This document shows, one piece after another, positions 41,344-58,831 of a stretch of DNA of 64,000 bases. Both the position numbers and the translations under genes were made by a program. Source of the stretch: Mantamonas sphyraenae STR306 (lineage: Eukaryota > Protista > CRuMs); NCBI GenBank assembly GCA_026936335.1, contig JAPMXV010000050.1, positions 1 to 64,000 of the forward strand, read 5' to 3'. Below the pieces are notes generated by a model. That model was not told the DNA's origin. It saw only the letters and a list, made by a program, of their open reading frames with translations, and ran no database searches. Positions within the stretch are counted from its first letter, which is position 1; each line of letters begins with the position of its first letter.

Positions 41344-41813
41344 TTGTCGGCCATAGAGGCGTTGTGTGTGTGTGGATCGTCAGAGCCGGGCAAGTAGAGA
41401 CTGGTGGTGTTGTCGATCTTCCTCCCTCGTCGTGACTGGGTGTCGAGCGTCGGTTCGCCTAAATGCAGTAAAGCCCCTCCTCACTCCGTTGTTCCTTGCA
41501 AAAAGTCCTCCTTGGTTGGGTTCCCCACCGTGCAAAAGCCACGCGCGAGACGTGACGAGACGCAGATGGAAACAGCCCATGCTCCACAGCACGCCCGTGC
41601 ATGGGTGTCACATTGCCACACACGTGGCACCCAGGTTTCACCTGGGCACACGCGAGAGCAGACACTCAGCAGCGCGGTGGAGAGGGTGGTCCTCTGGCCG
41701 CCGCGTATCGTGCAGCTGGCCAGCAGGGTGGGAAACGACGTCGGCAGCGCCAAGTGCCGGCCGTGTGTGCTGTGTACTCGACACATCACACACACGGGCC
41801 ACATTCACCCTGT

Positions 41814-44800
41814 TTAGGGCTTCTTGGGCGCCGGCTTCTTCGGGGCGGGCTTGCCCTCGTTGCCACAGGTGTGGCACTTCATCATCTTGTGCAGCTTGTT
41901 CCAGCGCTTCTGGAAGAGCGAGATCTGGCGGGAAGCGGCCCAGATGTGGCGGCGGATGCGCTTGGTGATGCGATCCACCTTGGTCTCCTTCTTGGCGGCA
42001 ATCTCACGCAGGTACTTGGCAAACGACTTGCTCATGTAGGCGAGGTAGCGCGACTGGTACACGGAGCGCTTGCAGGCCAGGGGCAGGTGGTTGAGCACGC
42101 GACGCAGGCAAGAGCGCTGCGGCGCAGGGGTCTTCCAGTAGCAACGCGAGTAGATGCGCGGCGCGGGCAGGTGGATGCCAGCCACGACGCCGCAGCGGCC
42201 CTTGCGCACGCACGGCAGACGGCTGCGCTTGAGACGCAGACGGCGACGCAGAAGAGCCATCTTGCGCAGGAGCACACGGAGCTTGAGGGTGCTCTGCTTC
42301 TTGAACATGCGCATGCGACGCAGGTCCTTGAGGGTCTTGAGGCGCTTCTGGTTGCAGGGCAGCTGTCGGCGACGCACGTAGGCGCGCCACAGCTTGGCCT
42401 TGAGGGACTTGAACTTGCCCTGCATGGCCTTGCGTGCCTGGCCGCTCATGCGAGCAATGAGCACGCGGTAAGCGCGCAGGTGGCTCTTCATGCGGTCGAT
42501 CTTGACACAGTAGTTGGCGTGCTTCTTGAAGCAGCGGCTGGTCTTCTTGCGACGCTGCAGCAGATGGCGCTTGGCCAGCTTCAGGGCACGCAGACGGCGA
42601 CGCAGTCGCTTGAGCGTGTTCTTCTTGCTGGCGTTGGCAGCACGCTTGGCGGCAGCCACGGCACGCGCAGACTTGCGCTTGGCCAGCGTCTTCTTGACAC
42701 GGCGGCTCTCCTCGTCGCTGTCAAACAGACGCGCCTTGGTGATGGAAGCCTTGGCCTGGCAGGCGCTGAGCGATTCGCGCAGGGTCTGCAGCGAATCCTT
42801 GTAGTTCTCGGCCAGGATGACAAAGCGGTCGCCACGGAAGAAGCGCTTCTTGTGCTTCTGACCACAACGAGCGCGTGCGTGGTGCATGCGACGGTTCCAC
42901 ATGCGCTTGGCCATGGCGCGGTCCAGCTTGCGCAGGCGGTTGTACTTGTTGCGAGCCTGGCGCGTCTTGCGGGCCAGGTTGAAGCGAGCGCGACCCTTGG
43001 CGTGGTTGCGCTTGTACAGCAGCGTGTGGAAGGTGTTGAGGGCAGCGGTGAGCTGGCGGGTGACCCAGTCGTGGCGCCACTTGTTGTACTCCACCACCGA
43101 GCACTGGTACAGCTTCTTGGCGTTGGCGTGCTTGGCAAACTGCTTGAAGCACTTGTGACGGTTCACACGACGCGGCTTGTACTCCAGCATCTTGATGATG
43201 CGGTTGCCACCCTTGCGCAGGTACTTGGCATCGCGGCGGCGCTTGGCCAGCTGGCGCTTCCTGGCCGCAATGACCATGGCCGGTGTCAGCTCGCCCGCAG
43301 GCAGGCCAGGGATCGGCGACTCGCGGTGCTCCGTCGGGTTCTTCTTGCGAAGGATGCGGCGCAGCTTGCGACGCACCGCACGCTGGGCACGCGCCTTGCG
43401 GCCACGCGGGCGACGGCGACGACGACGGCGGCGGTTCTTGCGACCCTTGCGACCCTTGCGACCCTTGCGACCCTTGCGGATGGCACGGCGCAGACGGCGC
43501 TTGGCACGACGCACCACACGCTTGCCCAGCGTCTTGCGGGCACGACGGATGACACGGCGCACGCGACGGCCGATGCGCACGCGGACACGACGGACAGGGC
43601 GGCGCAGAACCTTGCGGGCCTTGCGCACGTGGCGACGTCCCTTGCGCACCGCCTTGCGGACAAAGCGGATGGCACGGCGGAAGCGCTTACCGAAGCGGAT
43701 CTTGCGACGCAGCTTGCGCACCAGGCGACGAGCCACGTTGCGACGACGCACACGCAGGCGCAGCTTGCGCACCTTGCGCACCAGGCGCAGGGCACGAGCG
43801 AAGCGCATACGACGACGCACCACACGGCGGGCCTTGCGGACAACCTTGCGGACGAAGCGGCCACGACGACGCACCACACGGCGGGCCTTGCGGACAACCT
43901 TGCGGACGAAGCGACCACGACGACGCACCACACGGCGGGCCTTGCGGACAACCTTGCGGACGAAGCGACCACGACGACGCACCACACGGCGGGCCTTGCG
44001 GACAACCTTGCGGACGAAGCGGCGACGCACCACACGACGCAGGATCGGGCGACGGCGCACCACACGACGCACACGGCGGACCACACGACGCAGGATCGGG
44101 CGACGACGCACCACACGACGCACACGGCGGACCACACGACGCACACGACGCACACGGCGGCGAACGCGGCGGAAGATGCGACGGAAACGACGGCGGAAAC
44201 GCTTCTCCTCGTCGTACACATCGATGCTCTCGGGCTCATCGGCCTCCTCGTCGCTCTCGATGTCATCGGTGTCACGCACAGTGCGCTTGCAGTTGTTGTA
44301 CGAGCGCTTGTAGGCCAGATGCCACTCGCGCGCAATGTCGCGCTTGTTGCGAGCGTTCTTGGCCTGGTAGCGGCGGATGCTGGCAGCCACACGCTTGCAG
44401 GCGGCGGTCTGACGGGCATGGGCCTGCTGCAGGTTGTGACGCAGGTTGTGCAGGCGCAGAGTGATCTGGCCCACCTTTTCGTCACCGGCAGCGTTGCGGG
44501 AAGCAATCCACTTTTGCACCTTGGCCAGACGTGCCATGGTGCCCTTGATCATGGCTGCCACGCTGGCGCAGTTGCGACGGTTGCTGTCGCGCTTGCACTT
44601 GAGGGCAGCACGCTTGGCCAGCAGGCTGCGCTTCACCTTTTGCAGTTCGCGGCGTGCACGAACCATCTTGTCCCATTGTGTGGCCTCCTTCTTGCTCAGC
44701 TTCTGCCCGTTCCTGGCTCCGCTGATCTGCTTCTTGCAGCGCACACGCAGTGCTGTCAGGCGCTTCCACACGGCACGTGCACGGTTGCGCAGCGTGCGGC

Positions 44801-47800
44801 GGCGGCGAGCCACCGACGACGAGCACTTGTTCTTGCGCGTGGTCAGGCAGCTGATGGCACGGCGCTTCTCCAGCAGGGCGCGGCGCTGGGCCACCAGACG
44901 CTCCTCACGGGCGGCACACGTGCGGCGCAGACGCTCCACGCGGCCGTTGGATGCCAGGCGACGCTCCAGAGCAGCACGCTGGGCCTTGAGGCGACGCACC
45001 GTCTTGTGCACCTCACTCTGCGAGTGGCGGTTGAGCTTGTCGGCAAACAGAGCCTTCCACGACTCGTTGTACTTCTTGCATGCCACCTTGCGCTTGGCCA
45101 CGAGGCGCTTGCGCAGGTTGGCCAGACGCTTGAGCATGGCAGCCAGGCGACCGTAGTACAGCTTCCAGTCGTACTCGCGCACGCAGTGCTTCTTCATCAT
45201 CACCTTGTACTTGCAGCGGCGGCAACCCATGCCGATGTACTGGCGGTGGATGCGACGGAACAGATACAGCGAGGATCGCAGCAGGAACACGGCGTACTTG
45301 TGCGTGGTACCACAGCGGATCTGCTGGCCATACTTGTCCAGCAGCACCTTGGTCGTGCGGTACACCTTGTACACCTGCTGACGGATCAGCTTCATAAACT
45401 CGCAGATGCGCTGCGGGCGGTAGGTAGCCTCCATCGCCGTCTCCTTCTTGCGCTGGCGGTTCCACCAGCGGTCTGTGCGCTGCATGCAACGCTTCACGCC
45501 ACGGCGGAACTTGGTGGCGGTCGTGTCCATCCACAGGCCACGGCGCGGCTTCCAGTTGCACGGGAAGTGCTTCTTGCCACGGCTCAGCACCAGACGCAGG
45601 TTCTTGGGCAGAGTCTTCTTGGCACCCGGGCGCTTCGTGCACGCCGTAGCGAACCAACGGCGCCAGATCAGAGTGCGGCTGACCACAAAGCGGGCCCAGC
45701 TGTTGCGGAGCTGGCACCACACGCGCGCCACACCGCCACGCTTCTTGCACTGCACACGCTTCAGAGCCGCAGAGCGACGCAGCAGGCGTGCCAGGGCGGC
45801 CTGGTTGTTGCGCATACGGCGCATGTTGCGCAAAAAGACGCGCTTCCACACACCCAGCTGACGCGTCACCTTGACGATGAAGCGGCGCATCTGGGACATG
45901 GTGCGACGACGCAAGGCGCGACGACGGATGCAGTTGTAGTAACGGCAGCCAGCCAGGTGCTTCTTGTGCAGGTAGCGCTTGTAGCAGAACGAGGCAATGC
46001 TCTTGCCGGCCATCTTGCGGTAAGCACGAGCCTTGCGCAGGCAGCTGGCGTGGCGAGCACGACGCTGACGGATGCGCTGGATGGCCTCACGCAGCAGGCC
46101 CTGGTAGCCGTCGTACACGCAGTTGTAGTAGCGCACGTACAGGCGCTGGTGGGCGCATGCCTTCTTGACACGAGCACGGCGACCGGCGTTCTTGATGCGA
46201 GCCAGGATCTGGTTGGCACGCACCAGCCACACCTTGCTGTTGCCACGGTTGCCGATGCCACGCGAGCAGATGCCCACAGCACCGGTGGCCAGGTTCTCCG
46301 GAGCATACACGTACACGTTGTAGTAGCCGGCAGTGTGGCGCTTGTTGCGGCCACTGCCAACGTACACGTACTGCAGGGTGACGCGGATGCCACCGCCCAG
46401 CTTCAGAGTCTTGTTGCCACGGTTGCCCTTACGCACCATGCGCAGGTGGGCCGGACCCGAGTAGCGGCCGTGCTGGTTGTAACGCGCGGTGCGACCACGG
46501 CGGGTGCGCACAATCACCTCCGAGTTGAGGCCACGGTTGCCCCAGGCGCGGCCGTAGCGCACATGAGTCTGCACAGTGACACCACCGGCCTTGAACAGAG
46601 TCATCACGCCCGTCTTGCCGTAGATGTCAAACGAGCGGCCAAAGAACGAGCGGTAGTGCGGGTCGCCCGTGGCACGGCACGTGAGGATACGTGCACGCGG
46701 CAGCGGCTTGCGGCGAGCCACGCGGCGCTTGCGACGGCGCTGCAGGGCCAGCTGACCACGCACCTGGTTGCGGATGCACAGCAGATAACGCCTGCTGTGG
46801 ACGCCACCACGGCGGCCACGGCCGTATCGATGACGGCAGTACTTGACAATCGTGTTGCGTGCACGGCCATGCACCTGACGCAGCAGCTTGGCCACTGCGC
46901 GTGCGTTGCGTGCACGTGCGGCACGGCGGCGAAGGACCACCTTGCGAGCAATGGCGGCCAGGCGACCTCCGGCGTCGGCGATGCAGTCGTAGTAGCGAGC
47001 AGCCACACGGATGTGGCGGCAGGTGCGCTTGGCAACACGACGACGCTTGGCAGGCATCTTGGCCAGCAGACGGCCGGCCTTGACACGCCACGAGCGGTCG
47101 TTGCCCTTGCGGCCCATGCCGGATGTGCACAGACCAGTGCCCTGGAATGCCACACGCTCGCGCGTGGTCACCGTCACGTTGTAGTAGCCGTGGCCACGCG
47201 ACTTGCCATACCAGATGTTGATGCGCACGCGACGGCCAGCAGCCCACAGCGTCAGCTTGCGCGAACGCAGGCGACGAGCAGTGGCGGTGATGCGACCGTT
47301 GGTGGCAAAGGTGGCGGTGTGCTTGCCATGGCGCACAATCACGGCGCGGTTGAGGCCACGGCGACCGTGCCAGCGCATGTAACCCACACGCGTGATGATC
47401 TTGAGACCACGCACGGCAAACAGCACCAGGCTGCCCGTCTTGTTGTACACGTCAAAGCGACGTCCAAAGAACGAGCGGTAGTGCGGGTCGCCCGAAGACG
47501 TGCACGTCACCATGCGCGACTTCTTCACACGACGGGCCTTGGCCACACGGCGACGGATGCATGCCAGGTAGCGGGCACCCTGCGTGCGACGGTAGCGCTT
47601 GCGGCACAGACGCACAATGCCACTGCGGGTGCGTGCAGGCACGTGGCGCAGCAGCGAAGCAATCTGCTTGGCACGGCGTGCGCGCAGAGCCTTGGCACGG
47701 CGGCGTGCGGCCAACAGAGCCTTGCGCATGCCGTGGGCCGCGTCAAACAGACAGTCGTAGCGGCGGGCGGCGTTGTTGCGGTGGCGGCGACAGGCGCGGA

Positions 47801-50800
47801 CGATGCGACGGCGCTGGGCGCGGTTGCGGATCGACGCCACGACGGCGGCGGCCTTGCGCTTCCAGTAGGCGGCGTTGGCCACACGGTGACCAATGCCACT
47901 GGTGCAGTCGCCCTGGGCGCGAGTGGCCACGTCACCACGCGTGTTGACATACACGTTGTAGTAGCCCTTGGCGTATCCACGGCGGTTCTCCCACTGGTAG
48001 CGGGTGTCCACGCGCACCTTGCGTCCGTCCTTGGTGCGCACAGTGAGCACCTTGCGGAAGGAGCGGCGGCCCTGGCGGCGGATGCCACCGCAGAAGCCAC
48101 CAAAGCCTCGGCACTCGCCGAAGCGGCCAAAGGTGACGGTGCGACCCTGGACGCGAACCTGCACGTGGGTGATCACCGAGTTGGTGCCACGACCGTGGCT
48201 GTAAGCCAGGTGCGTGCGCACAAGCACACCCGACACACTCAGCAGCGTGCGCCACTTGCGGTTCACGCGGTAAATGTTAAAGGTGCGGCCCCAGAAGGAG
48301 CGGTAGTGCGGGTCGCCCGTGGCGCGGCAAGCCATGTTGCGCTTCAGGTGCTTCGGTGCAGGCACGGGCTTCTTCACGCGGCGCACATACGAACGCACAC
48401 ACAGGAAGTAGCGCGAGGCATGCAGGCGGCCCTTGCGAGTGTAGCGCACACGGCAGTACTTGGCGGCCTTGGCGCGGTGGGCGCGCGAGAGGCGACGCAG
48501 CCATGCGGCAGCGGCCTGCAGCGCACGGCGACGGCGGTTGCGACGTGCAGCAATCTGGCGCTTGGCAGCCGACTTGAGTCCCTCCATGTAGTCGTAGAGG
48601 CAGTTGTAGCGGCGAGCCTTGGTGCTCTGGCGCTTGCACACGCGCAGGGCACGGGCACGCTGGCCACGGCCCATCTTGCGCAGCACGGCGGCGGCGCGGA
48701 AGGCCCAGATGCGGTCGTTGGCACCGGCACCACGGCCAGAGGCACACAGACCGGAAGACTGGAGCGCCACGTCGTTGCGAGAGTACACGTAGACGTTGTA
48801 GTAGCCTGTGGTGTGGTTGCGGTTCCTGCCACGTCCGACGTGGTTGTACTGCAACAGCACGCGCACGTGACGTCCACGCACGGTGAAGTTGAGGGTGCGG
48901 CTGCCGCGACCACGGCGGGTGGTCAGACGGTAGGCCTTGGGGCCAGCGTAGCCGCCGTTCTGGTTGTACGTAGCCTTGCGGCCGGCCCAGACGATCTCCA
49001 CGCGGGAGTTGAGGCCACGGTTGCGCCAGGCGCGGCCGTAGCGAACAATGGTGTCCACACGCAGGGCGCCGTACTTGAACAGCGTCATGCGGCCCGTCTT
49101 TCCGTAGATGTCAAAGCGACGGCCGTGGAAGGAACGGTAGTGCGGGTCGCCTGTGGAGGCACACGTCACACGCTTGCTCAGGTGACGCGGCGTACGCTTG
49201 GCCAGCACACGCTTGACCGCAGCACGCACACACAAAAAGTAGCGGTGGGCCTTGCGGGCCAGCGGGTAGCTGCGGCCACACGAGCGCACAATGGCGCCAC
49301 GTGCACGCGCAGGCAGCTTGCGCAGCCAGGCGTTGGCAGCACGGCGCTTGGCAGCCACAAGGTGGCGGCGACGACGAGCAGCTGCAGCCGCAGCCTTGCG
49401 CATGCGGTGCAGATAGTCGTAGAGGCAGTTGTAGCGACGTGCAGCGTTGCCCTGACGGCGGCAGGCACGCACAGCGGCGTTGCGCTTGCGGCGCGGGGTG
49501 CGACGCAGCAGGTTGTTCACCTTGCGCTTCCAGTACGGCTCGTTGCCGCGATGACCCTGCGACACCGAGCAGGCACCCGAGGCCTGCACAGCCACCTGCG
49601 TGCGCGTGTAGATGTGCACGTTGTAGTAGCCGTTGGTGAAGTGGCGGTTGCGTCGTGCAGCCTTACCAGAGCGCACACGCACGTACTGCAAGTTGACCTG
49701 CACGCGATGGCCACGCGCCGTAAAGACCAGGCTGCGAGAGCCACGGCCGCGACGCACAGTCATGCGGTAGGCACGGTTGCCGCTGTAGCCACCGTTGTGG
49801 TTGTACAGCGCCACGCGGCGGCCGTTGCGCACAATGGTCACGCGCGAGTTGAGGCCGCGGTTGCGCCAGGCATGGCCGTAGCGAAGGTGGGTCTTCACCA
49901 CCAGTCCGCCAAAGTTGAACAGGGTCACGTTGCCCTGCTTGCCGTAAATGTCGTAACGGCGGCCGAAAAAGGTGCGGTAGTGCGGATCACCTGTGGAGGC
50001 GCACGTCACACGGCGGCTCAGGTTACCCGGGGCCACGTTGCGCTTGCGCACCTGCACAGCCACCTGCGCACGCACGCAGCGGTAATACTGAGTCGGGTTG
50101 CCACGCTTGCGGTTGCACACGCGAGCCACGGCACGACGGCCGGCGGCGTTGAGCTTGCGCAGCTGTGCAGTGGCCAGGCCAAACATGCGCTTGCGAAGGG
50201 CAGCGGCACGGCGGGCATGGAAGCCACGCACGTGCGAGCGAACGCACAGGTAGATGCGGTGGCCACGACCGCGGTAGCGACGACGGCACACGTTCATGTA
50301 CGAGCGACGCTGGCGAGCAGGCACACGACGCAGCAGCACCGACGCCTTGCGGGTCCACACGGCGTTGGCCTTGCGCTGGCGTGCCAGACGGGCAATGGCC
50401 GCGCGGCGCATGCCGTGCGATGCGTCGTACACGCAGTTGTAGAAGCGTGCGTTGTTGCCGCTGCGGCAGCGGCGCTTCAGGTAGCGACGCTGGTGGGCAG
50501 GCAGCTTGCTCAGGATGCGGTTGGCATGCGAGCGCCAGTAGCGTGCGTTGGCCACACGTCCAGCGCCACGGCCACAGTCGCCCGTGGCAGCCACACCGGC
50601 GGCGGCGCGAGCGCTCACCGACACGTTGTAGTAGGCACGCACAAAGCGACGGTTGCCGCCGTTGCTCACGCGGTGGCACGACAGACCCAGGCGCACCTGC
50701 TCACCCGTGTGGGTGCGGAAAGTGCGCTTGCGGCAGCCGGCTCCGCTGCAGCGGCAGTTGTTGTTCCAGTAAGCCACCTGGCGACCGTTCTCCTTGATCT

Positions 50801-52531
50801 GAACACGTGCGTTCAGGCCTCGGTTGCGCCAGTGGCGGCCGTACTGCACGTACGTGCGCACCTGCACACCCGAAAACGAGTACAGCGTACGCCAGCCCTG
50901 GAAGCCGTAGATGTCAAAGCGACGTCCAAAGAACGAGCGGTAGTGCGGATCACCGCCGCTTGAGCATGTCATGCGACGGCGCAGGCTACGCGGCACCGCA
51001 TCAGCCTCCTCGTCCGCCTCCTCGTCTTGCAGCATGCCACGACGACGACGGCGGCGGCGAATACGGCGACCACCACGGCGGCCACCTCGGCGGCCACGAC
51101 GACGACGACGACGCGGCACGGTGATGCAGCGACGGCGTGTCAGCCAGAAGCGCCAGCTAGCCTGCTTGCGCTTGAAGAAGCGCGTAAAGTCTGCGGCGCG
51201 AGCCTTCTGCCAGCGCTTGTACAGACGGCGCACATAGGCAATGGTCTGCTTGCGGTTCTGCGACAGCTTGCACATGCTTGCAGACTTGGCACATGCCTTG
51301 CCGGCGTTCAGGTCCGACGACAGCTGTGCGTTGTGTTGCGCACGCAGTTCAGCCCACGTCGGCACGCTCACCGCAGAGCGGCTGCGATCGAACGAGCGAT
51401 AGCAGAACTTGGGTCCGCGGAAGCGCTTGAGGATGGCACGCTCCTGCGCGGCCTCGATGCGTGCCTGCTTGCGGAACTTGAGCATGATGTTGGCCACATC
51501 GTTGAACGAATACTGCAGCAGTCGCTTCTGCGTGTAGCGGAAGCATCGCGCGAACCGGTTCTTGTACAGCTGGTTGCTGCGCGCAGCAGGAAGCTTGTCG
51601 CTGAACTTCATCAGCACACGTCTGTTTGTCGCAAAGCCCCAAACGCGCCGCGCCGCACGGAAAACCACAGCGTTTTTTCCCAACCGCAAACAAACGCCAA
51701 AACATCGGCCCCACGCACATGTCCCCAATCCGTGTCAGCCTCCACACACATCTCTACGCCTGCGCCTCCTCGCCACCTTCCTGCACATCTCCTCCTCAAC
51801 CCGCGGCCGCCCTCATGCCGCCGCCTGCGCAGCCTCAACACTCCTTCGGCACGATGCTCCCGCTCCTCGCCGGAAATGCACGCCCCCCGTTTTTCCAACC
51901 TACCGCTTGCTCAGGGGCTCCACAAACAGCTTCTTGCATGTCTTTGACGGCTGCGTGATCTGTTCGTCGTCAAGGACCTGTGCGTATCCACACGTGTCAG
52001 CCTCCTGCCTTGTACGACCGCCGCGAGCTCGCCGCAACTCTACGATTTCCCTCTTCCCTTCTTTTCGCCCTTGCGCCCCTGCGCCGCCCACCTACCTCCT
52101 GCAGCGAGCCATACGGCGCCGAAGAGTCCTCGACAGCCTCGTCGGAGCTCGAGGCGTCCTCCACATCGGTAGAGCTGTGTGTGTGTGTGCCGTCCTCCCT
52201 CGTGTCAGCCCTCTGCCGTTCCATCCAAGAGGGAACGTAGCCTTTTTCACTCACCTTGCCAATTCCTCCGTGTCCTCCACAGACATGCCCATTACGGGCG
52301 TCGTGTCCATGGCATCCACCTGTGTGTGTCCCGTGTCAGCTACGCCTCCCTGCCGCCCTTCCGCCCGCTGCGTCCGGCCCTCGCGAAAAACAAGCCTGGT
52401 GTTTTTTCGCCCCGCCCGCGATTATCGTGCCCCTCCGCTCTCGCCCCGCGCGTCCCACGCCCGCTTTCACAACTCACAAAGCTGGCGGCTCCGACCAAAA
52501 AGAGCAGCAGAATAAGAATTCCGTGTTTCAT
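41814..52531 (-). CDS. Giant (~3359 aa) secreted Arg/Lys-rich protein with six GDPH-containing VWD/C8-like repeats and polybasic repeat blocks
   Basis: Exons 52531-52478, 52319-52255, 52174-52096, 51977-51904 and 51621-41814 join in frame with GT-AG introns; signal peptide MKHGILILLLFLVGAASFVDA; six C..(T/S/G)GDPHYR(S/T)F.GR repeats; strong codon bias. Confidence 0.85.
43808..44160 (-). repeat. Coding tandem repeats: 54-bp unit (GRFVRKVVRKARRVVRRR) about x4 and 51-bp unit (RPILRRVVRRVRRVVRR) about x2
   Basis: Repeated cgacgacgcaccacacggcgggccttgcggacaaccttgcggacgaagcg and aggatcgggcgacg units. Confidence 0.9.
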
Positions 52532-52755
52532 CTGTGCTTGCGTCTCTGAAAACAGGTTGGCGAGTCTCAAACTGAATTGGGTGTTGCGTCTTTTCTTCTT
52601 TTGTTGCAATACCACACGTTTGTCCGGGTTTGATTGCTCCAATCGAAAAGAGTTTGAGAAGGTGATGAAACGAGGTTTGGTTTGGTTTGGGGTTGCCGCG
52701 AGGCAGAGATGAGTTTTTTGGTTGGCGTCTTCCGCGCAGCTGCCGCGACGGCCCT

Positions 52756-53628
52756 TCACACTTCCCCGTTTGCCCCCGCCTCCTCCACCTCCATCTCGTT
52801 TCCACTCTCCGGCTCGCCGCTCTCCTCCCTTTTGTCCTCCTCTTGCGGTTCCGCCTCCTCTCGCTTGTCCTCTTCCGTGCTCCCCGCCGCCTGTGCAGCC
52901 TCCACGTCTCCTCCGTCCTCCGCGTGTTCCCCTTCCGCCTGCTCCTCTGTGATCTCCTCCGCCGCGGCCTTGCTGTTTGCACTTTCCACTTCCATGGCCG
53001 AGTCGCCTGCAGCCACTCGCTCAGCCTCGGCCTCGCTCTCTGCGCGGATCTGCTCACGAGCTGCCTCGATTTCCGCTTCGATCTCCAGGAACAGTTCTTC
53101 GTCCACGTCGTCAATGAAGCTCTTGCGCAGCTTGGCCATTTTAGCTTCCAGTCGAGCCTGCCGAGCCGCCTCGCGCGCTGCCTCCTTCTCCTTCAGGTGG
53201 AACACATCGTCGTATTGCTGCACAAAGATCATGTATGTGTCCTCTCCGTACCGCTTGTACCAGCTCTTGTAGTTGTGTTCAAAGTTAAAGTACCCTCCAA
53301 ACCGGTGCACAAACTCGCCTACAACAGCGGCCATCGGCGTCACCGGCACCCGTTGCGCACATGGAACGGATCCGTAAGCACCTCGCGCACAAACATGCAC
53401 AACTCGCTCGGCAGCAGCTCCGCCTCTGGATGGCTCTTCATGTACAGTACCATCAGATCCATCACCCATTGTGTCCCCGAGCTTGTCCCTTCCCCCTCCG
53501 CCGCCGCCGTCCCGTTGCTTGCCGCTGTTCCCACAGAACTCACCGACCCAGCACGTGTCCGTGTGCTCCCTTGTGCCCCTTGTGTCTGCGATGCCAATAC
53601 GTCACCTCCGTTGCTGCTGCTGCTGCTA

Positions 53629-53659
<31 letters not shown>

Positions 53660-54965
53660 GGGTGGTTGTACCAGTACTGGACGCGTTTGCGGCCAATTCG
53701 CTGTCGTTCTCCTCCATGGCATCCACCTCCACCGCCCCCTTTGTTTCCTCACTGTCCTTTTGCACGAGTGTGTCGTCGCCATCGCCCCCCTCCTCCTCCT
53801 CCGACACTTCCGACATAGATTCAGAGGCAGCCTCTTCTCCGTCGTCGTCGGTGGTCATCAGGTCGTGGTCCTCATACACATCCTCCAGGGCGTCCAACTG
53901 CAGGAGTTGCGCCTGGAATGCAAGCTCCTCCGCTGGCTTGCCGTGTGTCTCCCGTAGCGTGTCCATCAGCTCCCTCACCACGCGCGCCTGCTCCTTCAAC
54001 ACCTCGTACAGGTCGCACAGCTCGTTCACCTCCGCTTTGAGCTGCTGCACATTGATTTCCCCCAGCATTTCCGTCTCGTCTGTAAGCAGTGTCTCCTTGG
54101 CGTCCACCCGTTGCACCTCTTCGCGAGCCTGCAGCAGTTTGCCCTCCACCTCGACCGCCATTTTGTCGCACGCCGCAAAGTGCTTGTCCAGCAGATTGAC
54201 CATACGCCGCAGATGGCGCAAGTCTTCAGTTTGGAATGTGGCATACCGGCCGATAAAGTGCAGGATGTGCTCCAGCTTCGTCAGCGTCAGATGCCCTTCC
54301 CAGTCCGCCGGTATCCGCTCCCTGTCCTCGTCTGTGATCTTGCGCCGCACCGTGTCATTCAACTCACGCACCATCATGCGATACTTGGCGCGTGTCTTCT
54401 TCAGAGGGTCGTACTGCTCCACCTTCTTGTCTGCCGCAACCTTCTTTTTCATCATCATCGGCGGCGGCGGTGGCGCTGCTGCCCGACGCGGCGCTGGTGC
54501 AGGTGGGGCGTTCGAGGCCATCACCTTTTTGGACGCCCCATTTGTGTCTCCACTTTCCTCCACATCCATGCTTGTGCCCACGTCTCCCAACGCCGCAGCG
54601 GCTTCTCGCGCACGCCGCTCCGCTTCCTGCTGCAAACTCCTCTTCTGCTGCTCCTCCTTGTGCCGTTCCAGCCTGATCCGTTCCAGCCGCGCCGCCAGGT
54701 CTCCGATTTTGCCTTTGCTGCTGCTCTCCTCTTTGGGCTCGCTCGCTGTCTTCTGCGACGGCGTCTCCTGCGCCTCGCCGCTCGTCTCTTCTTGCCTGTC
54801 CTGCACTGTGAATTCTGCCTTGTCTTCCTCCTCCTCCTCCTCCACCTTGGCCCTCTTGTCGTCCTGTTTCAGTTCCTCCTCGCTCTCAGACTCGACGATG
54901 CGCATGCCGTCCACTGCCGACGTATGCTCGCTGGACGATTCTTCGATTTCGTCTCGCTTGCTCAT
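52756..54965 (-). CDS. Acidic coiled-coil hypothetical protein; apparent 1-nt frameshift at ~53350
   Basis: ORF 53340-54965 and ORF 52756-53469 join seamlessly (...HVRNG-VPVTPMAAVVGEF...) if one G is added to a GGG run. Confidence 0.65.
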
Positions 54966-55146
54966 GCCTCACCTCTCCCTTGGCGCTGTCTGCGCCACCC
55001 AAAGCTCTCCCAGTACGTGCCAGCCCACGCCTCCACGCCGTCTTTGCCCACGCCTGCGTCACACGCACTCACTCACACGCACACGTACACCTCGTTTGCC
55101 GTCTGCCACACACACTGCACCTCCACCTGGCCTTGCGCAGCTAGCA

Positions 55147-58100
55147 ATGTCGGCGGAATCCATTCTTGCCCTCCTCGACGAGTCTGAGCAAGAGCTCAAG
55201 GTCTATGCCCTGCGCAAGATCAACGACATCGTCGATGTCTCCTGGGCCGAGGTGGCCGACTATGTCGACGACATGTATGTTTTGCCGTCCGTGGCAGACC
55301 CTCCTGCTTCTGCCTTTGCCTCCCTCGTCCCCCTTTCCGGCCCTCTCGTCACTGTCGATCCCGCTGACCCGTCCCGTCTCCGCCGCTATGGCCTCTTCCC
55401 ATCCCCGTTCGCCTGTCACCGCAGTGGTGCACTGTCCGAAGACTCGGATTTCCAGCACAACAAGCTGGCTGCCCTCGTTGCTGCCAAGGTCTGTGCCCGT
55501 TTTCAGGCTCCCCGCGCGCGCGCCAACCACCGCGCGTCCGATTCCGGCAGCTCCGCTCACACCCCCTGTGCTCACACGCCGTCCACTTACGTCCGCAGGT
55601 CTATTACCATCTCGGTGCATACAACGAGGCCTGCTCCTACGCCCTCCTTGCGGGCGACCAGTTTGACGTCACGGAGCGCTCCCAGTTTGTCGAGACGGTG
55701 ATCTGTGCGTTGTGCCAATTCCTCCCGCGTTTCCGTCGCCTCGCCCACCTCCCGCCTCCACACCGTCCTCTCCACACCCACATGTGCCCGCCATCCTCCT
55801 GCATACGTCATCGTGCTCCTCCCTTGCCCATTCCACGCCTCGGAAATGCCCAGACACACGCCGTGGCGCCCCCGTTCCAGTCTCGGCCGAACGCCGCCAA
55901 AAACCGAGCGCGTGGAGAATGCCATCCGCAGCAGCCGGCCCTTTCGACGCTCCCCGCTTGCCATCATCACACGCTGACACAACGTCCTCCCACTCCCTAA
56001 CATTGTCCATTCGCACTCCGCGCACCCGGCATCCTTGCGCAGCCAACTGCATCGACTCGTACATCGAGAAGCAGGTGGAAAATGCCGAAGCTGCGCTGCG
56101 CCACAAGCTGCTCGAGGAACAGGGCGACGAGCCGCCGCGTGAACTCGTGCTTGCAGAAATCGACCCCAACCTCGAGCAGGTGGTGGAACGCATGTTCCAG
56201 CGCTGTTTCGACGACGGAGAGTTCAAGCAGCCCATCGGCATTGCCCTTGAGGCACGCCGTTTGGACATTCTGGAAAAGGCCATTGCCCTCGCAGGCGAAG
56301 CCAGCGGAGACGCACAGGCCACCGTCTCCGAGTACCTGTCGTACACATACACCCTGTGTGTCACCAACGTCGTCGGCTCCCGAGAGTTTCGCCAAAGCAT
56401 CATGCGCTACCTTGTGCGCAAGTACCAGAGTCTCGAGGTGCCCGACTACGTCAACATGTGCCAGTGCCTCGTCTACCTCGACGACCCGTCCACCGTTGCC
56501 TCCACCCTCGTTTCCCTCCTCAAGAGTGGCTCCGAGGGCGACGAGCTCCTCGCCTACCAGATCGCCTTTGATTTGTGCGACACAGCAACCCAGAAATTCA
56601 CCATCAGCATCCGCGAAAACCTGCCTTCGCCCGCTGCCAGCAGCAGCAGCAGCAACAGCAGCAACAGCGAAGGTGATGACGCCCAGCAGGAGGACACAGA
56701 CAACGCCGAGTTTGCCGCTCGTCTCAAGAAGCTAGACATGATCCTGCAGGGCGAGACCTCGATCAATCTCTACCTCTCCTTCCTGTGCCGCAACAACAAC
56801 ACGGACATCCGCATCATGAACAACACCAAGGACGCACTCGAGGTGAAGAACTCGGTGCTCAACCTGGCCGCCATCTTGTGCAACGGCATCATGCACAGCG
56901 GCACCACCGTGGACACTTTTCTGCGCAAGAACATGCAGTGGCTGTCTCGCTGCAAGAAGTGGGCCCAGTTCTCCGCCGTAGCCTCGCTGGGCATCATCCA
57001 CTATGGCCACATGAGCGAAGGCCAAAAGGTGCTCCAGCCATACCTGCCCGGAGGCGCCAACACGGGCGGACCTGGCTCCCCGTACAGTGAGGGCGGCTCT
57101 CTGTACGCCGTGGGCCTCATGCACGCCAACCATAGCCGTCCGGACACCATCGACTACATGTGCACGCAGCTGCAGGCTGCCGCGGGACGCGAGCCCGTCA
57201 TCCACGGCGCCTGCCTGGGCCTCGGCGCAGCCGCCATGGCCACAGGCAACCAGGGTGTGGTCAACCAGCTGCGTGATATCCTGCACAGCAACGACGCAGT
57301 GGCGGGCGAGGCCGCAGCCCTGGCCATCGGTTTGGTCATGGTGGGCACAGCCGACGAGCTCACCCTGAACGACTTTCTGGGCACCGCACACAACACCGAG
57401 CACGAAAAGATCATCCGCGCCATCGGCATGGCCTTTGCCATGATCAACTACGGCCGTGAGGAGGAGGCCGACGTGATGATCGAGCAGCTCAGCAGCGACA
57501 AGGACCCCCTGCTGCGCTTTGGAGGCATGTACACCATTGCCATGGCGTACTGCGGCACACGCAACAACAAGGCCCTCCGCAAGCTGCTGCACTTTGCCGT
57601 CAGCGATGTCAACGACGACGTGCGCCGCGCCGCCGTTACAGCCATCGGCTTCTTGCTCTTCCGCGAGCCCCAAATGTGCCCCAAATTTGTGTCGCTGTTG
57701 GCCAAGTCGTACAACCCGCACGTGCGCCACGGCGCAGCCACCGCACTGGGCATTGCTTGCGCAGGCACAGGCCTCAAGGAGGCGCTGGACATTCTGGAGC
57801 AGCTCACCGAAGACCAGAGCGACTTTGTGCGCCAGGGCGCACTCATCTCCATGGCCATGATCCTGATGCAGCAGAACGAGAAGCAGGAGCCGCGCGTGAA
57901 AAAGGTGCGCGAGATGTACGCCTCGATCATCGCCAACAAGCGCGAGCCAACCATGGCCAAGCTGGGTGCCATTCTGGCCACAGGCATCATCGATGCAGGC
58001 GGACGCAACGTGACCATCAGTCTGCTCACACGCACGGGCCACAAGAACATGGAAGCCATTGTCGGCCTGGCCCTATTCACCCAATTCTGGTACTGGTATC

Positions 58101-58831
58101 CGCTCACGCACTTTATCAGCATGGCCTTTTCGCCCACCGCGCTCATTGGCTTGAACAAAGACCTGCAGGTGCCCAAGATGGAGTTTACCTCCAACGCCGC
58201 ACCCTCCATGTTTGCGTACCCGGAGCCCATCAAGGCACCGGAGAACAACAAGAAGGAAAAGAAGGGCAAAGCCGTGCTGAGCTTCACAAACAAGGCACGC
58301 AATCAGGACGGCTCACTGGCGTCTGCAAACACCCTGCGCAACGCCCTGACCGAGGAGGAGGAGCCCAAGGACGACGACAAGACAAGCGCAGCCGGTGACA
58401 AGACCGACGCCATGGAGGAGGACGGCGTGGGTCCCACCGCAACTTCAGGCGCTGACGCAGACAAAGGAAAAGACAAGGCCGACGAGGAGAACGGCGAGGA
58501 CGACAAGGAGCAGGCAAACCAGGCGCAGGAGCAGGAGCCCCAGTTTGAGGTGCTGAACAACCCGTCGCGCGTTACCGTCAGCCAGCGCTCGGTGGTGCAA
58601 TTTAACGAAGGCCGCTACGAGCCGGCCGTGGAGGGATATGTGTTTGGCATCACCATGCTGCAGGACAACACCCCCGAGGAAAAAGTGGAGCTGGCAGATA
58701 TTGTCCTGGTCAAGGCCAATGGTGGCTCCAGCAGCAGCTCCAGCGGAAGTGCAGCTGCAGACGCCATGGAAGAGGATGAGGGCGAGGAGCCGCCGCCTCC
58801 CGAAGACTTTGACTACCCTGCCGCGTCGTGA
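55147..58831 (+). CDS. RPN2: 26S proteasome regulatory subunit Rpn2/PSMD1
   Basis: ILALLDE..ELKVYAL; SKV-like AAKVYYHLG; HSGTTVDTFLR; PC repeats HGACLGLG; AVSDVNDDVRRAAV; FWYWYPL; introns 55275-55424, 55489-55598, 55705-56042. Confidence 0.97.

What the first reader, a model, noticed from the sequence alone, without database searches (positions are those of the whole stretch)
43337..44275. Acidic spacer-EEKR followed by tandem amphipathic Arg/Val peptides: antimicrobial-peptide-precursor layout inside the giant protein
Seen in sequence: the acidic stretch DTDDIESDEEADEPESIDVYDEEKR is followed directly by FRRRFRRIFRRVRRRVRRVRRVVRRVRRVVRRR, then repeats of (G)RFVRKVVRKARRVVRRR. The block runs about 290 aa without an acidic residue, with hydrophobic residues every 3-4 positions. 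Established knowledge: an acidic pro-piece ending in E-K-R before the mature peptide is the layout of frog skin AMP precursors (brevinin/temporin/dermaseptin). From memory, RRVVRRVRRVVRR matches the start of the engineered lytic peptide LBU2 (WLBU2 family), and KRFRRRFRRIF resembles cathelicidin BMAP-27 (KRFRKKFKKLF). Inference: kexin/furin-type processing could release natural membrane-lytic peptides for prey killing or defence, arising by convergence. A polyanion-condensing, protamine-like role is the alternative.
Basis: partly seen in the sequence, partly recalled or inferred. Interest (0 to 1): 0.85.

Follow-up and report, generated by a model that had tools for sequence, protein, structure and literature searches.

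The report
Arg/Val helix cassette in cationic glue-like protein
The stretch is real and encodes a 290-residue, strongly positive, membrane-seeking helical arm inside a giant secreted mucin-domain protein of the bacteria-eating flagellate Mantamonas; it is more likely a tethered gripper for negatively charged surfaces than a frog-style precursor cut into small antimicrobial peptides, and none of this has been tested experimentally.

Summary
**Observation:** confirmed, on the minus strand. Residues 2486-2800 of a 3304-aa ORF (41814-51728) hold a 23-aa acidic patch ending EEKR. A 291-aa acid-free Arg/Val/Lys tract follows, with strong helical amphipathicity (z about 10 against shuffles).

**Organism:** Mantamonas sphyraenae, by assembly statistics and nearest homologues.

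**Whole protein:** hyper-cationic (net about +860). It has six GDPH VWD/C8 modules and probably a signal-peptide exon.

**The tract is a distinct cassette.** It differs from the ordinary K/R spacers of the paralogues. The layout is: acidic patch, then an aromatic-RRR-x-F-RR junction, then Arg/Val helix segments kinked by Pro/Gly. This cassette recurs:
- in about ten other loci of this genome, including a lipase ORF;
- twice in a M. plastica transcript.

Here it was enlarged by very recent 54-bp and 51-bp tandem duplications.

**Against frog-type or kexin-released peptides:**
- EKR is not conserved among cassette copies.
- There are no spacers between units.
- There are 84 dibasic sites in 290 aa.
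- The acidic patch (-14) cannot mask +164.

**Best reading:** a tethered arm that binds polyanions or membranes, carried on a sticky cationic polymer. Lytic activity stays possible but untested.

Other follow-ups of this scan noted the same family and cassette on other DNA of this genome.

The parts
52469..52531 (-). Candidate signal-peptide exon (M-K-H-G + hydrophobic core + small residues), separated from the main ORF by an unconfirmed intron
   Evidence: Three-frame reading upstream of the ORF. Similar exons lie upstream of paralogues on C43, C6 and C50c. M. plastica homologue P0002 carries a signal peptide in its transcript. Splice junctions not confirmed, because no RNA run was available.
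41814..51728 (-). Main ORF, 3304 aa: 21.5% Arg, 7.9% Lys, 3.5% Asp+Glu, net charge about +860, no hydrophobic anchor
50991..51134 (-). N-terminal poly-Arg run followed by a basic-to-acidic junction (R-run, G-M-L-Q-D-E-E-A-D). It resembles the R-run/G-R-V-Q-D/acidic junctions of the paralogues.
45765..50990 (-). Six tandem VWD + C8-like modules of 275-321 aa, each with C-x3-GDPHY (potential Asp-Pro autocleavage site)
   Evidence: Alignments with invariant C, G, D, P, H, Y, W. AF2 pLDDT 87. Foldseek top hits are MUC2, MUC5AC and VWF D assemblies, FCGBP and RGM. Paralogue C43 has Pfam VWD at E = 7e-18.
44205..44273 (-). Acidic patch, aa 2486-2508, 14 D/E of 23, net -14
44172..44204 (-). Junction motif K-R-F-R-R-R-F-R-R-I-F (aa 2509-2519). 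Related junctions occur in C43 (Q-R-F-C-R-R-F-R-R) and in P0155 (F-W-R-R-R-S-F-R-R and F-W-R-R-R-R-F-R-V).
43329..44198 (-). Cationic amphipathic tract, aa 2511-2800: 56% K+R, 18% Val; helix-length segments of about 17-18 aa separated by Pro or Gly
   Evidence: The analogous tract of P0155 is modelled as a long helix, pLDDT 80-91.
43809..44021 (-). 54-bp in-frame tandem repeat, 3.9 copies, 99% identical (the 18-aa G-R-F-V-R-K... units)
44029..44143 (-). 51-bp in-frame tandem repeat, 2.3 copies, 98% identical (the P-I-L-R-R-V-V-R-R... units)
43437..43478 (-). 9-bp microsatellite encoding (G-R-K)n; the same microsatellite occurs at loci on C2, C51 and C6
41814..43328 (-). C-terminal 504 aa, K/R-rich (31%) but not amphipathic (z about 2), ending in a K-P-A-P-K-K-P repeat

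Best explanation
The stretch encodes one copy of a Mantamonas-specific cassette. The cassette is a short acidic patch, then an aromatic/Arg junction, then a chain of Arg/Val amphipathic helix segments kinked by Pro or Gly. Here it sits in the C-terminal third of a secreted, hyper-cationic VWD/C8 (mucin-type) polyprotein, and very recent in-frame tandem duplication has enlarged it to 290 residues.

Most likely it works while still attached to the large protein, or to a large fragment left by GD/PH self-cleavage. It would be unfolded in water. On meeting a polyanionic, partly hydrophobic surface (a bacterial envelope or membrane, or an anionic substratum or glycocalyx) it would fold into helices that lie with the Val stripe in the interface and the Arg face on the anionic groups. 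The polymer-forming VWD/C8 modules would then make a sticky cationic mesh for prey capture and/or surface adhesion, possibly with permeabilisation of the prey.

Shown: the sequence features, the fold of the modules, the recurrence of the cassette, and the recent duplication. Inferred: secretion, helix formation on surfaces, the binding targets, and the absence of excision into small peptides.
For: **Amphipathicity is specific to this tract.**
- Tract: z = 9.9.
- K/R-rich tracts of paralogues: C50b z = 1.4, C43 z = 3.3, C50c z = 1.4-5.0 across three tracts.
- Rest of this protein: z of 2.1 or less.

**The acid-plus-tract unit recurs.**
- As a protein match that includes the acidic patch, it hits 12 further places in the own genome, on C69 (twice), C24, C46, C37, C18, C54, C49, C47, C15, C5 and C32.
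- It occurs twice in M. plastica transcript P0155, which has a signal peptide and no VWD. There the tracts score z = 8.4-9.2 and one is modelled as a helix at pLDDT 80-91.
- The C32 copy lies about 80 bp from a Lipase_3 match inside the same 990-aa open frame. The cassette is therefore grafted onto unrelated secreted proteins.

**Context is a polymer-type secreted protein.**
- VWD/C8 fold.
- Candidate signal-peptide exons here and in paralogues.
- Whole-protein net charge +860.

**Naegleria proteins pair the same parts.** Secreted VWD proteins of N. gruberi and N. fowleri also combine a signal peptide, a GDPH VWD and a long cationic amphipathic helical tail.

**A proven analogue exists.** Flatworm Mlig-ap1 combines more than 3,600 aa of extreme K/R regions with VWD-C8-TIL. 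It is an RNAi-validated secreted adhesive whose function is blocked by heparin (PMC6410801).

**The chemistry binds membranes.** Arg/Val-only helices of 24 residues bind and kill bacteria (PMC7357155).

**The organism fits.** Mantamonas glides on surfaces and is a voracious bacterivore (PMC10492846).
Against: - There is no expression, localisation or activity data for this gene. No RNA run was served, and the intron and signal-peptide join are unconfirmed.
- Pure electrostatic glue would not need helical amphipathicity, and a pure membrane warhead would not need a +860 VWD polymer, so the combined reading is an inference.
- The acidic patch is far too small to mask the tract here (-14 against +164). 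In P0155 the two are roughly balanced (-24/+38 and -52/+63). The copy in this gene may therefore work differently from the other copies.
- The DNA-identical repeat units show that part of the length is evolutionarily brand new and may be neutral.
- Proprotein-convertase P-domains exist in the genome, so processing cannot be excluded.
Confidence: 0.45

Rival explanations
1. Antimicrobial-peptide polyprotein precursor. Kexin/furin-type convertases cut after E-K-R and at the R-R-R/G or R-R-R/P boundaries, releasing helical lytic peptides of about 17-18 residues that kill prey or competitors.
For: - Segments of 17-18 aa bounded by tribasic runs plus Gly or Pro.
- Very high hydrophobic moments for single units, 0.89-1.03.
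- The same chemistry as LBU2, which is bactericidal at 24 residues.
- A BMAP-27-like start.
- Convertase P-domains in the genome.
- An acidic patch ending in KR.
Against: - 84 dibasic and 16 R-x-[KR]-R sites in 290 aa. The longest dibasic-free piece is 10 aa, so no site is privileged.
- There are no acidic or other spacers between units.
- EKR is not conserved in other cassette copies.
- The unit identity is DNA-level slippage, not conservation.
- The tract lies 2,500 residues inside a 3,304-residue protein, with 504 more residues after it.
- No Brevenin or cathelin domain.
- The same cassette sits inside a lipase ORF, where excision would cut the enzyme apart.
Confidence: 0.15
2. A polyanion-condensing or packaging element (protamine-like or coacervate-like). 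The tract and the acidic patches drive condensation of the protein with polyphosphate, sulfated glycans or acidic partner proteins inside secretory vesicles, or pure electrostatic cohesion of a glue, with no role at membranes.
For: - Extreme charge density (56% K+R).
- A whole family of hyper-cationic VWD paralogues with alternating acidic patches.
- VWD/C8 proteins of animals are packed in granules as ordered assemblies (structures).
- Mlig-ap1 cohesion is electrostatic and heparin-sensitive.
Against: - It does not explain why this tract, unlike the other K/R spacers of the family, keeps a strict 100-degree Val/Phe/Ile stripe.
- It does not explain why the same cassette is attached to a lipase and to non-VWD proteins.
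Confidence: 0.2
3. A functionally neutral low-complexity expansion. Replication slippage in a gene that tolerates any basic sequence produced the tract, and the periodicity is a by-product of repeating one short unit.
For: - Four units identical at DNA level, 54-bp and 51-bp arrays at 98-99% identity, and a 9-bp microsatellite.
- A low-depth contig of run X4 skips 214 bp across the 54-bp array, a possible length variant or assembly collapse.
Against: - The non-repeated half (aa 2641-2800) is also amphipathic, z = 5.8.
- All periods are multiples of 3.
- The cassette with its junction motif is kept in other genes and in another species.
Confidence: 0.12
4. Not a real coding feature: the true gene is the 3120-aa plus-strand ORF (41601-50963), or the region is an assembly artefact.
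For: - A 9.3-kb stop-free frame exists on the plus strand, the direction of most neighbouring genes.
Against: - The minus frame gives six modules with conserved Cys, Gly, Trp and GDPH, and a confident VWD/C8 fold.
- It has transcribed homologues in M. plastica.
- The plus frame is Ala/Thr/His/Leu-rich low complexity, as expected for the antisense of CGN/AAG-rich codons.
- Short-read contigs agree with the assembly.
Confidence: 0.02

Closest known systems
Mlig-ap1, temporary-adhesion protein of the flatworm Macrostomum lignano (PMC6410801)
   Same: A giant secreted protein that combines a VWD-C8 assembly with thousands of residues of extreme Lys/Arg content. It acts electrostatically on anionic partners, in an organism that attaches to and moves over surfaces.
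   Different: - No sequence homology shown.
- Mlig-ap1's K/R regions are not reported to be amphipathic helices.
- Mlig-ap1 also has lectin, TIL and EGF modules.
- Here even the VWD modules are cationic, there are six of them with GDPH, and the organism is a unicellular CRuMs flagellate.
Engineered Arg/Val helical antimicrobial peptides (LBU2; WLBU2 family) (PMC7357155)
   Same: Two-letter Arg/Val chemistry arranged as an idealised cationic amphipathic helix. Hydrophobic moment of single units is 0.9-1.0.
   Different: - Those are free, designed 24-mers.
- This is a 290-residue natural tract inside a 390-kDa protein.
- Exact sequence identity could not be verified.
- Activity untested.
Frog-skin preprodermaseptin/brevinin-type precursors and cathelicidin BMAP-27
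   Same: An acidic stretch ending in K-R before a cationic amphipathic helix. The first 11 residues follow the BMAP-27 pattern.
   Different: - No homology: no Brevenin or cathelin domain.
- The acidic patch is internal, not behind the signal peptide.
- There is no single short mature peptide.
- KR is not conserved among cassette copies.
FCGBP, MUC2, MUC5AC and VWF D assemblies (GDPH-bearing VWD domains)
   Same: VWD + C8-like fold, tandem repetition, and C-x3-GDPH, the site of autocatalytic Asp-Pro cleavage with fragments held by disulfides (abstracts of PMC8267560 and PMC10880436).
   Different: - Animal proteins are near-neutral or acidic and glycosylated.
- They have no TIL here, no mucin PTS domains, and carry no Arg/Val helix tracts.
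Uncharacterised Naegleria VWFD proteins (N. fowleri KAF0981606.1, N. gruberi XP_002671385.1)
   Same: Signal peptide + GDPH VWD + C8-like part + long cationic amphipathic helical tail, with hydrophobic moment 0.81-0.87 over 36 aa.
   Different: - Tails are Lys/Arg/Ala-rich, not Arg/Val.
- No acidic cap seen.
- Much smaller proteins (533-926 aa).
- Function unknown.

Membership tests
Frog-skin AMP precursors (preprodermaseptin / Brevenin, PF03032) | Conserved signal peptide directly followed by an acidic propiece | tested here: not met
   The acidic patch is at aa 2486-2508 of the ORF, about 2,480 residues after the start. Pfam finds only VWD in the whole ORF.
Frog-skin AMP precursors (preprodermaseptin / Brevenin, PF03032) | Propiece ends in a Lys-Arg processing site | tested here: inconclusive
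   E-E-K-R is present in this copy. Other copies of the cassette lack it: D-F-W-R-R-R twice in P0155 and E-D-Q-R-F in C43. No cleavage data.
Frog-skin AMP precursors (preprodermaseptin / Brevenin, PF03032) | One short mature peptide (about 10-50 aa) at the C-terminus | tested here: not met
   A 290-aa tract followed by 504 more residues.
Multi-copy AMP polyproteins (apidaecin / magainin / Baramicin type; from general knowledge) | Repeated mature peptides separated by spacers that carry the only processing sites | tested here: not met
   No spacers. 84 dibasic sites in 290 aa; longest dibasic-free piece 10 aa.
Cathelicidins | N-terminal cathelin-like domain before the cationic peptide | tested here: not met
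   No cathelin domain in the Pfam scan. Only an 11-residue pattern resemblance to BMAP-27.
VWD domain proteins (PF00094) with GDPH | VWD beta-sandwich fold plus a C8-like helical Cys-rich part | tested here: met
   AF2 pLDDT 87. Foldseek E = 2.5e-7 to MUC2 and MUC5AC D assemblies, probability 1.00. The profile search retrieves FCGBP and tectorin-type proteins. Pfam VWD is significant in paralogue C43 but sub-threshold here, 21 bits against a cut-off of 22.9.
VWD domain proteins (PF00094) with GDPH | Asp-Pro autocleavage at GDPH | not testable with these tools
   The motif C-x3-G-D-P-H-Y is invariant in all six modules. Cleavage itself needs protein chemistry.
Mantamonas acid-capped cationic amphipathic-helix cassette (defined here) | Acidic patch, then an aromatic/Arg junction (F or W, R-R-R, x, F, R-R), then an Arg/Val-rich tract with helical periodicity and Pro/Gly kinks | tested here: met
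   Junction comparison. Periodicity z = 9.9 here and 8.4-9.2 in P0155. Protein-level matches that start within the acidic patch at 12 further places in the own genome. DNA identity of 65-76% to the C18, C54, C46, C51 and C69 copies.
Mlig-ap1-like cationic VWD adhesives | Secreted giant protein with VWD-C8 plus very long K/R regions | tested here: met
   Architecture compared with the description in PMC6410801. This is an analogy of layout only. Homology was not tested and adhesion is not testable here.
Protamines / sperm nuclear basic proteins | Small nuclear DNA-condensing proteins without a signal peptide | tested here: not met
   A 390-kDa protein with extracellular-type VWD modules and a candidate signal-peptide exon.

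The most novel reading that the evidence does not exclude
Mantamonas owns a modular, genetically portable warhead: an acid-capped Arg/Val amphipathic helix that is a natural counterpart of the de novo designed LBU peptides. It grafts this warhead onto unrelated secreted proteins (cationic VWD glue, lipases, beta-rich scaffolds) to aim them at, and breach, bacterial prey envelopes. This would be an undescribed class of protist antibacterial or prey-handling effector. In this gene it would be multimerised into a 16-segment array on a polymer.
Probability: 0.25. Interest if true: 0.8.

Novelty: new variant of a known kind. Interest (0 to 1): 0.55.

Why it matters
How small bacterivorous flagellates catch, hold and kill prey is almost unknown at the molecular level. 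CRuMs is a deep eukaryotic branch with one genome.

A secreted polymer that unites mucin-type VWD/C8 modules with an extreme polycation and an AMP-like helix array would link two fields: underwater bioadhesion (flatworm Mlig-ap1) and cationic antimicrobial peptides.

The finding also gives concrete, cheap experiments: peptides, heparin or polyphosphate competition, and footprint proteomics.

If the cassette is a reusable targeting or lytic module, it is a natural design principle that peptide engineers reached independently. If not, the finding is still a clear example of a lineage-specific hyper-cationic secretome family.

Tried and rejected
- **Plus-strand reading of the coordinates:** gave Gly/Asp/His low complexity.
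- **Rfam and tRNA scans of the window:** nothing.
- **Pfam on the whole ORF:** only a sub-threshold VWD start. Pfam on P0155: nothing.
- **Homologue search with aa 2300-3304:** one weak hit, P0155, which proved to be the key lead.
- **Homologue search with P0155 residues 200-800:** returned only itself.
- **BLASTP of the tract against the P0155 tail:** nothing, because composition adjustment removes such sequence. I used motif and periodicity analysis instead.
- **ESM Atlas on the beta-rich domain of P0155:** only unnamed clusters at 0.88-0.91, not informative.
- **Single-sequence AF2 of P0155:200-800:** poor (pLDDT 44) except for the cationic helix.
- **Sequencing runs:** none is on record as RNA, so expression and splicing of this gene could not be checked. 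Four runs of one study hold the DNA. Which, if any, is the published RNA run could not be told.
- **Fetching cassette loci on C69, C18, C54 and C46:** Those copies are known only from match tables.
- **Exact LBU2 sequence:** not found in held papers.
- **Spliced model:** the joined protein (signal-peptide exon + possible acidic mini-exon at about 52120-52167 + main ORF) was not built or searched. Exons were read separately by reference.
Full report
**1. What is at the coordinates**

Read on the plus strand, the interval gives Gly/Asp/His low complexity.

- The acidic stretch is aa 2486-2508 (window 44205-44273), with 14 D/E of 23, and is followed by K-R.
- From aa 2509 there is an acid-free run of 291 residues, down to window 43332.
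- Over aa 2509-2800 there are 165 K+R and one D/E, net +164.
- A run that long occurs in 0.15% of shuffles of the whole protein.
- The 'hydrophobic every 3-4' impression holds up. The mean helical hydrophobic moment is 0.676 against 0.346 for shuffles (z = 9.2-9.9), with the maximum at 100-105 degrees per residue.
- Pro or Gly interrupts the tract about every 17-18 residues.

At DNA level the repeats are in-frame minisatellites:

| Period | Copies | Identity |
|---|---|---|
| 54 bp | 3.9 | 99% |
| 51 bp | 2.3 | 98% |
| 9 bp, (G-R-K)n | 4.7 | 100% |

The four 18-aa units differ only in their last codon. Short-read contigs from four runs of one study match the flanks and pieces of the tract without differences, and break inside the repeats.

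**2. Whose gene, and is the frame real**

- The neighbours are eukaryotic: HECT, ankyrin, MYCBPAP, RPN2 and laminin-EGF.
- The assembly has 25,061,354 bases in 78 contigs. This equals the published FALCON assembly of Mantamonas sphyraenae: 25.06 Mb, 78 contigs, 59% GC (PMC10492846).
- The nearest homologues are Trinity transcripts of Mantamonas plastica.

The minus frame is the real one.
- It contains six tandem modules of 275-321 aa with invariant C-x3-G-D-P-H-Y and conserved Cys, Gly, Trp, Tyr and Asn.
- A module folds with pLDDT 87 into a beta-sandwich plus a helical Cys-rich part.
- Its best structural matches are the D assemblies of MUC2, MUC5AC, VWF and FCGBP, and RGM.
- The 3120-aa plus-strand frame is the antisense shadow of a CGN/AAG-rich gene.

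**3. The whole protein**

It is 21.5% Arg and 7.9% Lys but only 3.5% Asp+Glu, giving net about +860 and about 390 kDa, with no hydrophobic anchor. Every 100-residue block is strongly positive except the one holding the acidic patch.

A plausible signal-peptide exon lies at 52469-52531(-). Similar exons, followed by acidic sequence, lie upstream of the paralogues on C43 and C6. M. plastica homologue P0002 shows signal peptide + acidic region + basic VWD modules in one transcript.

Secretion is therefore inferred, not shown. No run on record as RNA was available. I did not build or search the spliced protein.

**4. The family**

Module searches of the own genome find hyper-cationic paralogues:
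- two more on this contig (71-84 kb and 125-134 kb);
- one each on C43, C6 and C59.

A charge-neutral Kelch+VWD relative lies on C57. C43 has a bona fide Pfam VWD, E = 7e-18.

A profile of 16 modules retrieves 350 proteins. Of the 150 best hits, 37 are strongly cationic. These include uncharacterised proteins of Naegleria gruberi, N. fowleri and Willaertia magna. Two Naegleria proteins have signal peptide + GDPH VWD + a long cationic amphipathic helical tail.

**5. The tract is a distinct cassette, not just more of the family's K/R spacer**

| Region | z for helical amphipathicity |
|---|---|
| This tract | 9.9 |
| Its non-repeated half, aa 2641-2800 | 5.8 |
| C50b K/R tract | 1.4 |
| C43 K/R tract | 3.3 |
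| C50c K/R tracts (three) | 1.4-5.0 |
| Rest of this protein | 2.1 or less |

A search with the C-terminal third found one weak hit, P0155. P0155 is a 1586-aa M. plastica transcript with a signal peptide and no VWD. It shows the same layout twice: a long acidic patch, then D-F-W-R-R-R-x-F-R, then (V-R-R-V-V-R-R)n with Pro kinks. Its tracts score z = 8.4-9.2 and one is modelled as a helix at pLDDT 80-91.

The junction here (K-R-F-R-R-R-F-R-R) and one in C43 (Q-R-F-C-R-R-F-R-R) are variants of that motif.

Searching the own genome with the window's acidic patch plus tract gives 12 further places: C69 twice, C24, C46, C37, C18, C54, C49, C47, C15, C5 and C32. Most lie in or next to loci that also match P0155.
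- The C32 copy lies about 80 bp from a Lipase_3 match in the same 990-aa open frame.
- DNA identity to the C18, C54, C46, C51 and C69 copies is 65-76%.

**6. How it most likely works**

The cassette looks like a reusable arm for anionic, partly hydrophobic surfaces. Arg/Val peptides of this design bind and disrupt bacterial membranes at 24 residues (PMC7357155).

Here the arm sits on a polymer-type VWD/C8 protein that is itself a polycation. The experimentally validated flatworm adhesive Mlig-ap1 has the same combination: VWD-C8 plus more than 3,600 aa of extreme K/R, heparin-sensitive (PMC6410801). Mantamonas glides on surfaces and eats bacteria voraciously.

I therefore favour a tethered gripper on a sticky cationic mesh, for prey capture and/or adhesion, possibly permeabilising prey (confidence 0.45).

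GD/PH self-cleavage, known for FCGBP and mucins (abstracts), could leave the tract on a large C-terminal fragment. That is inference.

**7. Why not a frog-type or kexin-released AMP precursor**

- The acidic patch is internal, not behind the signal peptide.
- E-K-R is not conserved among cassette copies.
- There are no spacers between units.
- There are 84 dibasic and 16 R-x-[KR]-R sites in 290 aa, and the longest dibasic-free piece is 10 aa, so no cut is privileged.
- The unit identity is slippage, not conservation.
- The patch (-14) cannot mask +164. In P0155 patch and tract are roughly balanced: -24/+38 and -52/+63.
- No Brevenin or cathelin domain.
- A copy sits inside a lipase frame.

- Convertase P-domains exist in the genome.
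- The BMAP-27 string is correct.
- Single units have very high moments.

The exact LBU2 match could not be verified. I give this rival 0.15. A pure polyanion-condensing or cohesive role gets 0.2, neutral expansion 0.12, and artefact 0.02.

**8. Novelty and verdict**

I found no paper describing these proteins. The Naegleria relatives are annotated only as predicted or VWFD-domain proteins.

Other follow-ups of this scan noted the same VWD family and the same cassette elsewhere in this genome. I used those notes as leads only, and tested the recurrence and the lipase association myself.

This is a new variant of known kinds: cationic VWD adhesives and cationic amphipathic helices. It has an unusual, lineage-specific modular cassette. 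Function is untested.

Noticed in passing
window 41601-50963 (+): A 3120-aa stop-free frame runs antisense to the giant gene, codon-aligned with it. It is Ala/Thr/His/Leu-rich low complexity and is best explained by the extreme codon usage of the sense strand.
   Followed up: partly
window 52687-55701 and 55712-58831 (+): The proteasome subunit RPN2 is split over two adjacent open frames: RPN2_N positions 2-61 in the first and 102-296 in the second. This indicates a short intron or a frameshift at about 55,700.
   Followed up: no
P0124 (Naegleria fowleri KAF0981606.1), P0031 (N. gruberi XP_002671385.1), P0143 (Willaertia magna): Heterolobosean amoeboflagellates have uncharacterised cationic GDPH-VWD proteins. 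The two Naegleria proteins I read carry a signal peptide and very long cationic amphipathic helical tails, an architecture parallel to the Mantamonas proteins.
   Followed up: partly
L046 (G000:C43) ORF aa 560-660; L045 (C50c) aa 1310-1320 and 2010-2020; window aa 226-240: A recurring basic-to-acidic junction, R-run then G-R-(R)-V-Q-D then an acidic patch (G-M-L-Q-D-E-E in the window). In C43 a 100-aa acidic insertion with an internal Q-R-F-C-R-R-F-R-R sits inside a VWD module, just before its G-Y-Y-N-V-Y-V strand.
   Followed up: partly
L048 (G000:C57:25544-31357, +): A charge-neutral 1938-aa relative with Kelch repeats, two VWD domains and a MUC4-type C8-3 domain. It is a possible 'normal' ancestor type of the cationic family.
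   Followed up: partly
window 43865-44080, run X4: One low-depth contig (4.9x) skips 214 bp across the 54-bp array. This is either a collapsed assembly of the repeat or a shorter allele.
   Followed up: no
G000:C2:167702-167868, C51:569823-570419, C6:28013-28221: The 9-bp (G-R-K)n-type microsatellite of the tract (window 43437-43478) recurs at 80-100% identity at several other loci, one just downstream of the C6 paralogue.
   Followed up: no
window 1-40000 versus 42000-50000: GC skew is strongly negative (-0.2 to -0.4) over the plus-strand genes but near zero over the giant minus-strand gene, whose GC content is also higher (0.64-0.66 against about 0.60).
   Followed up: no
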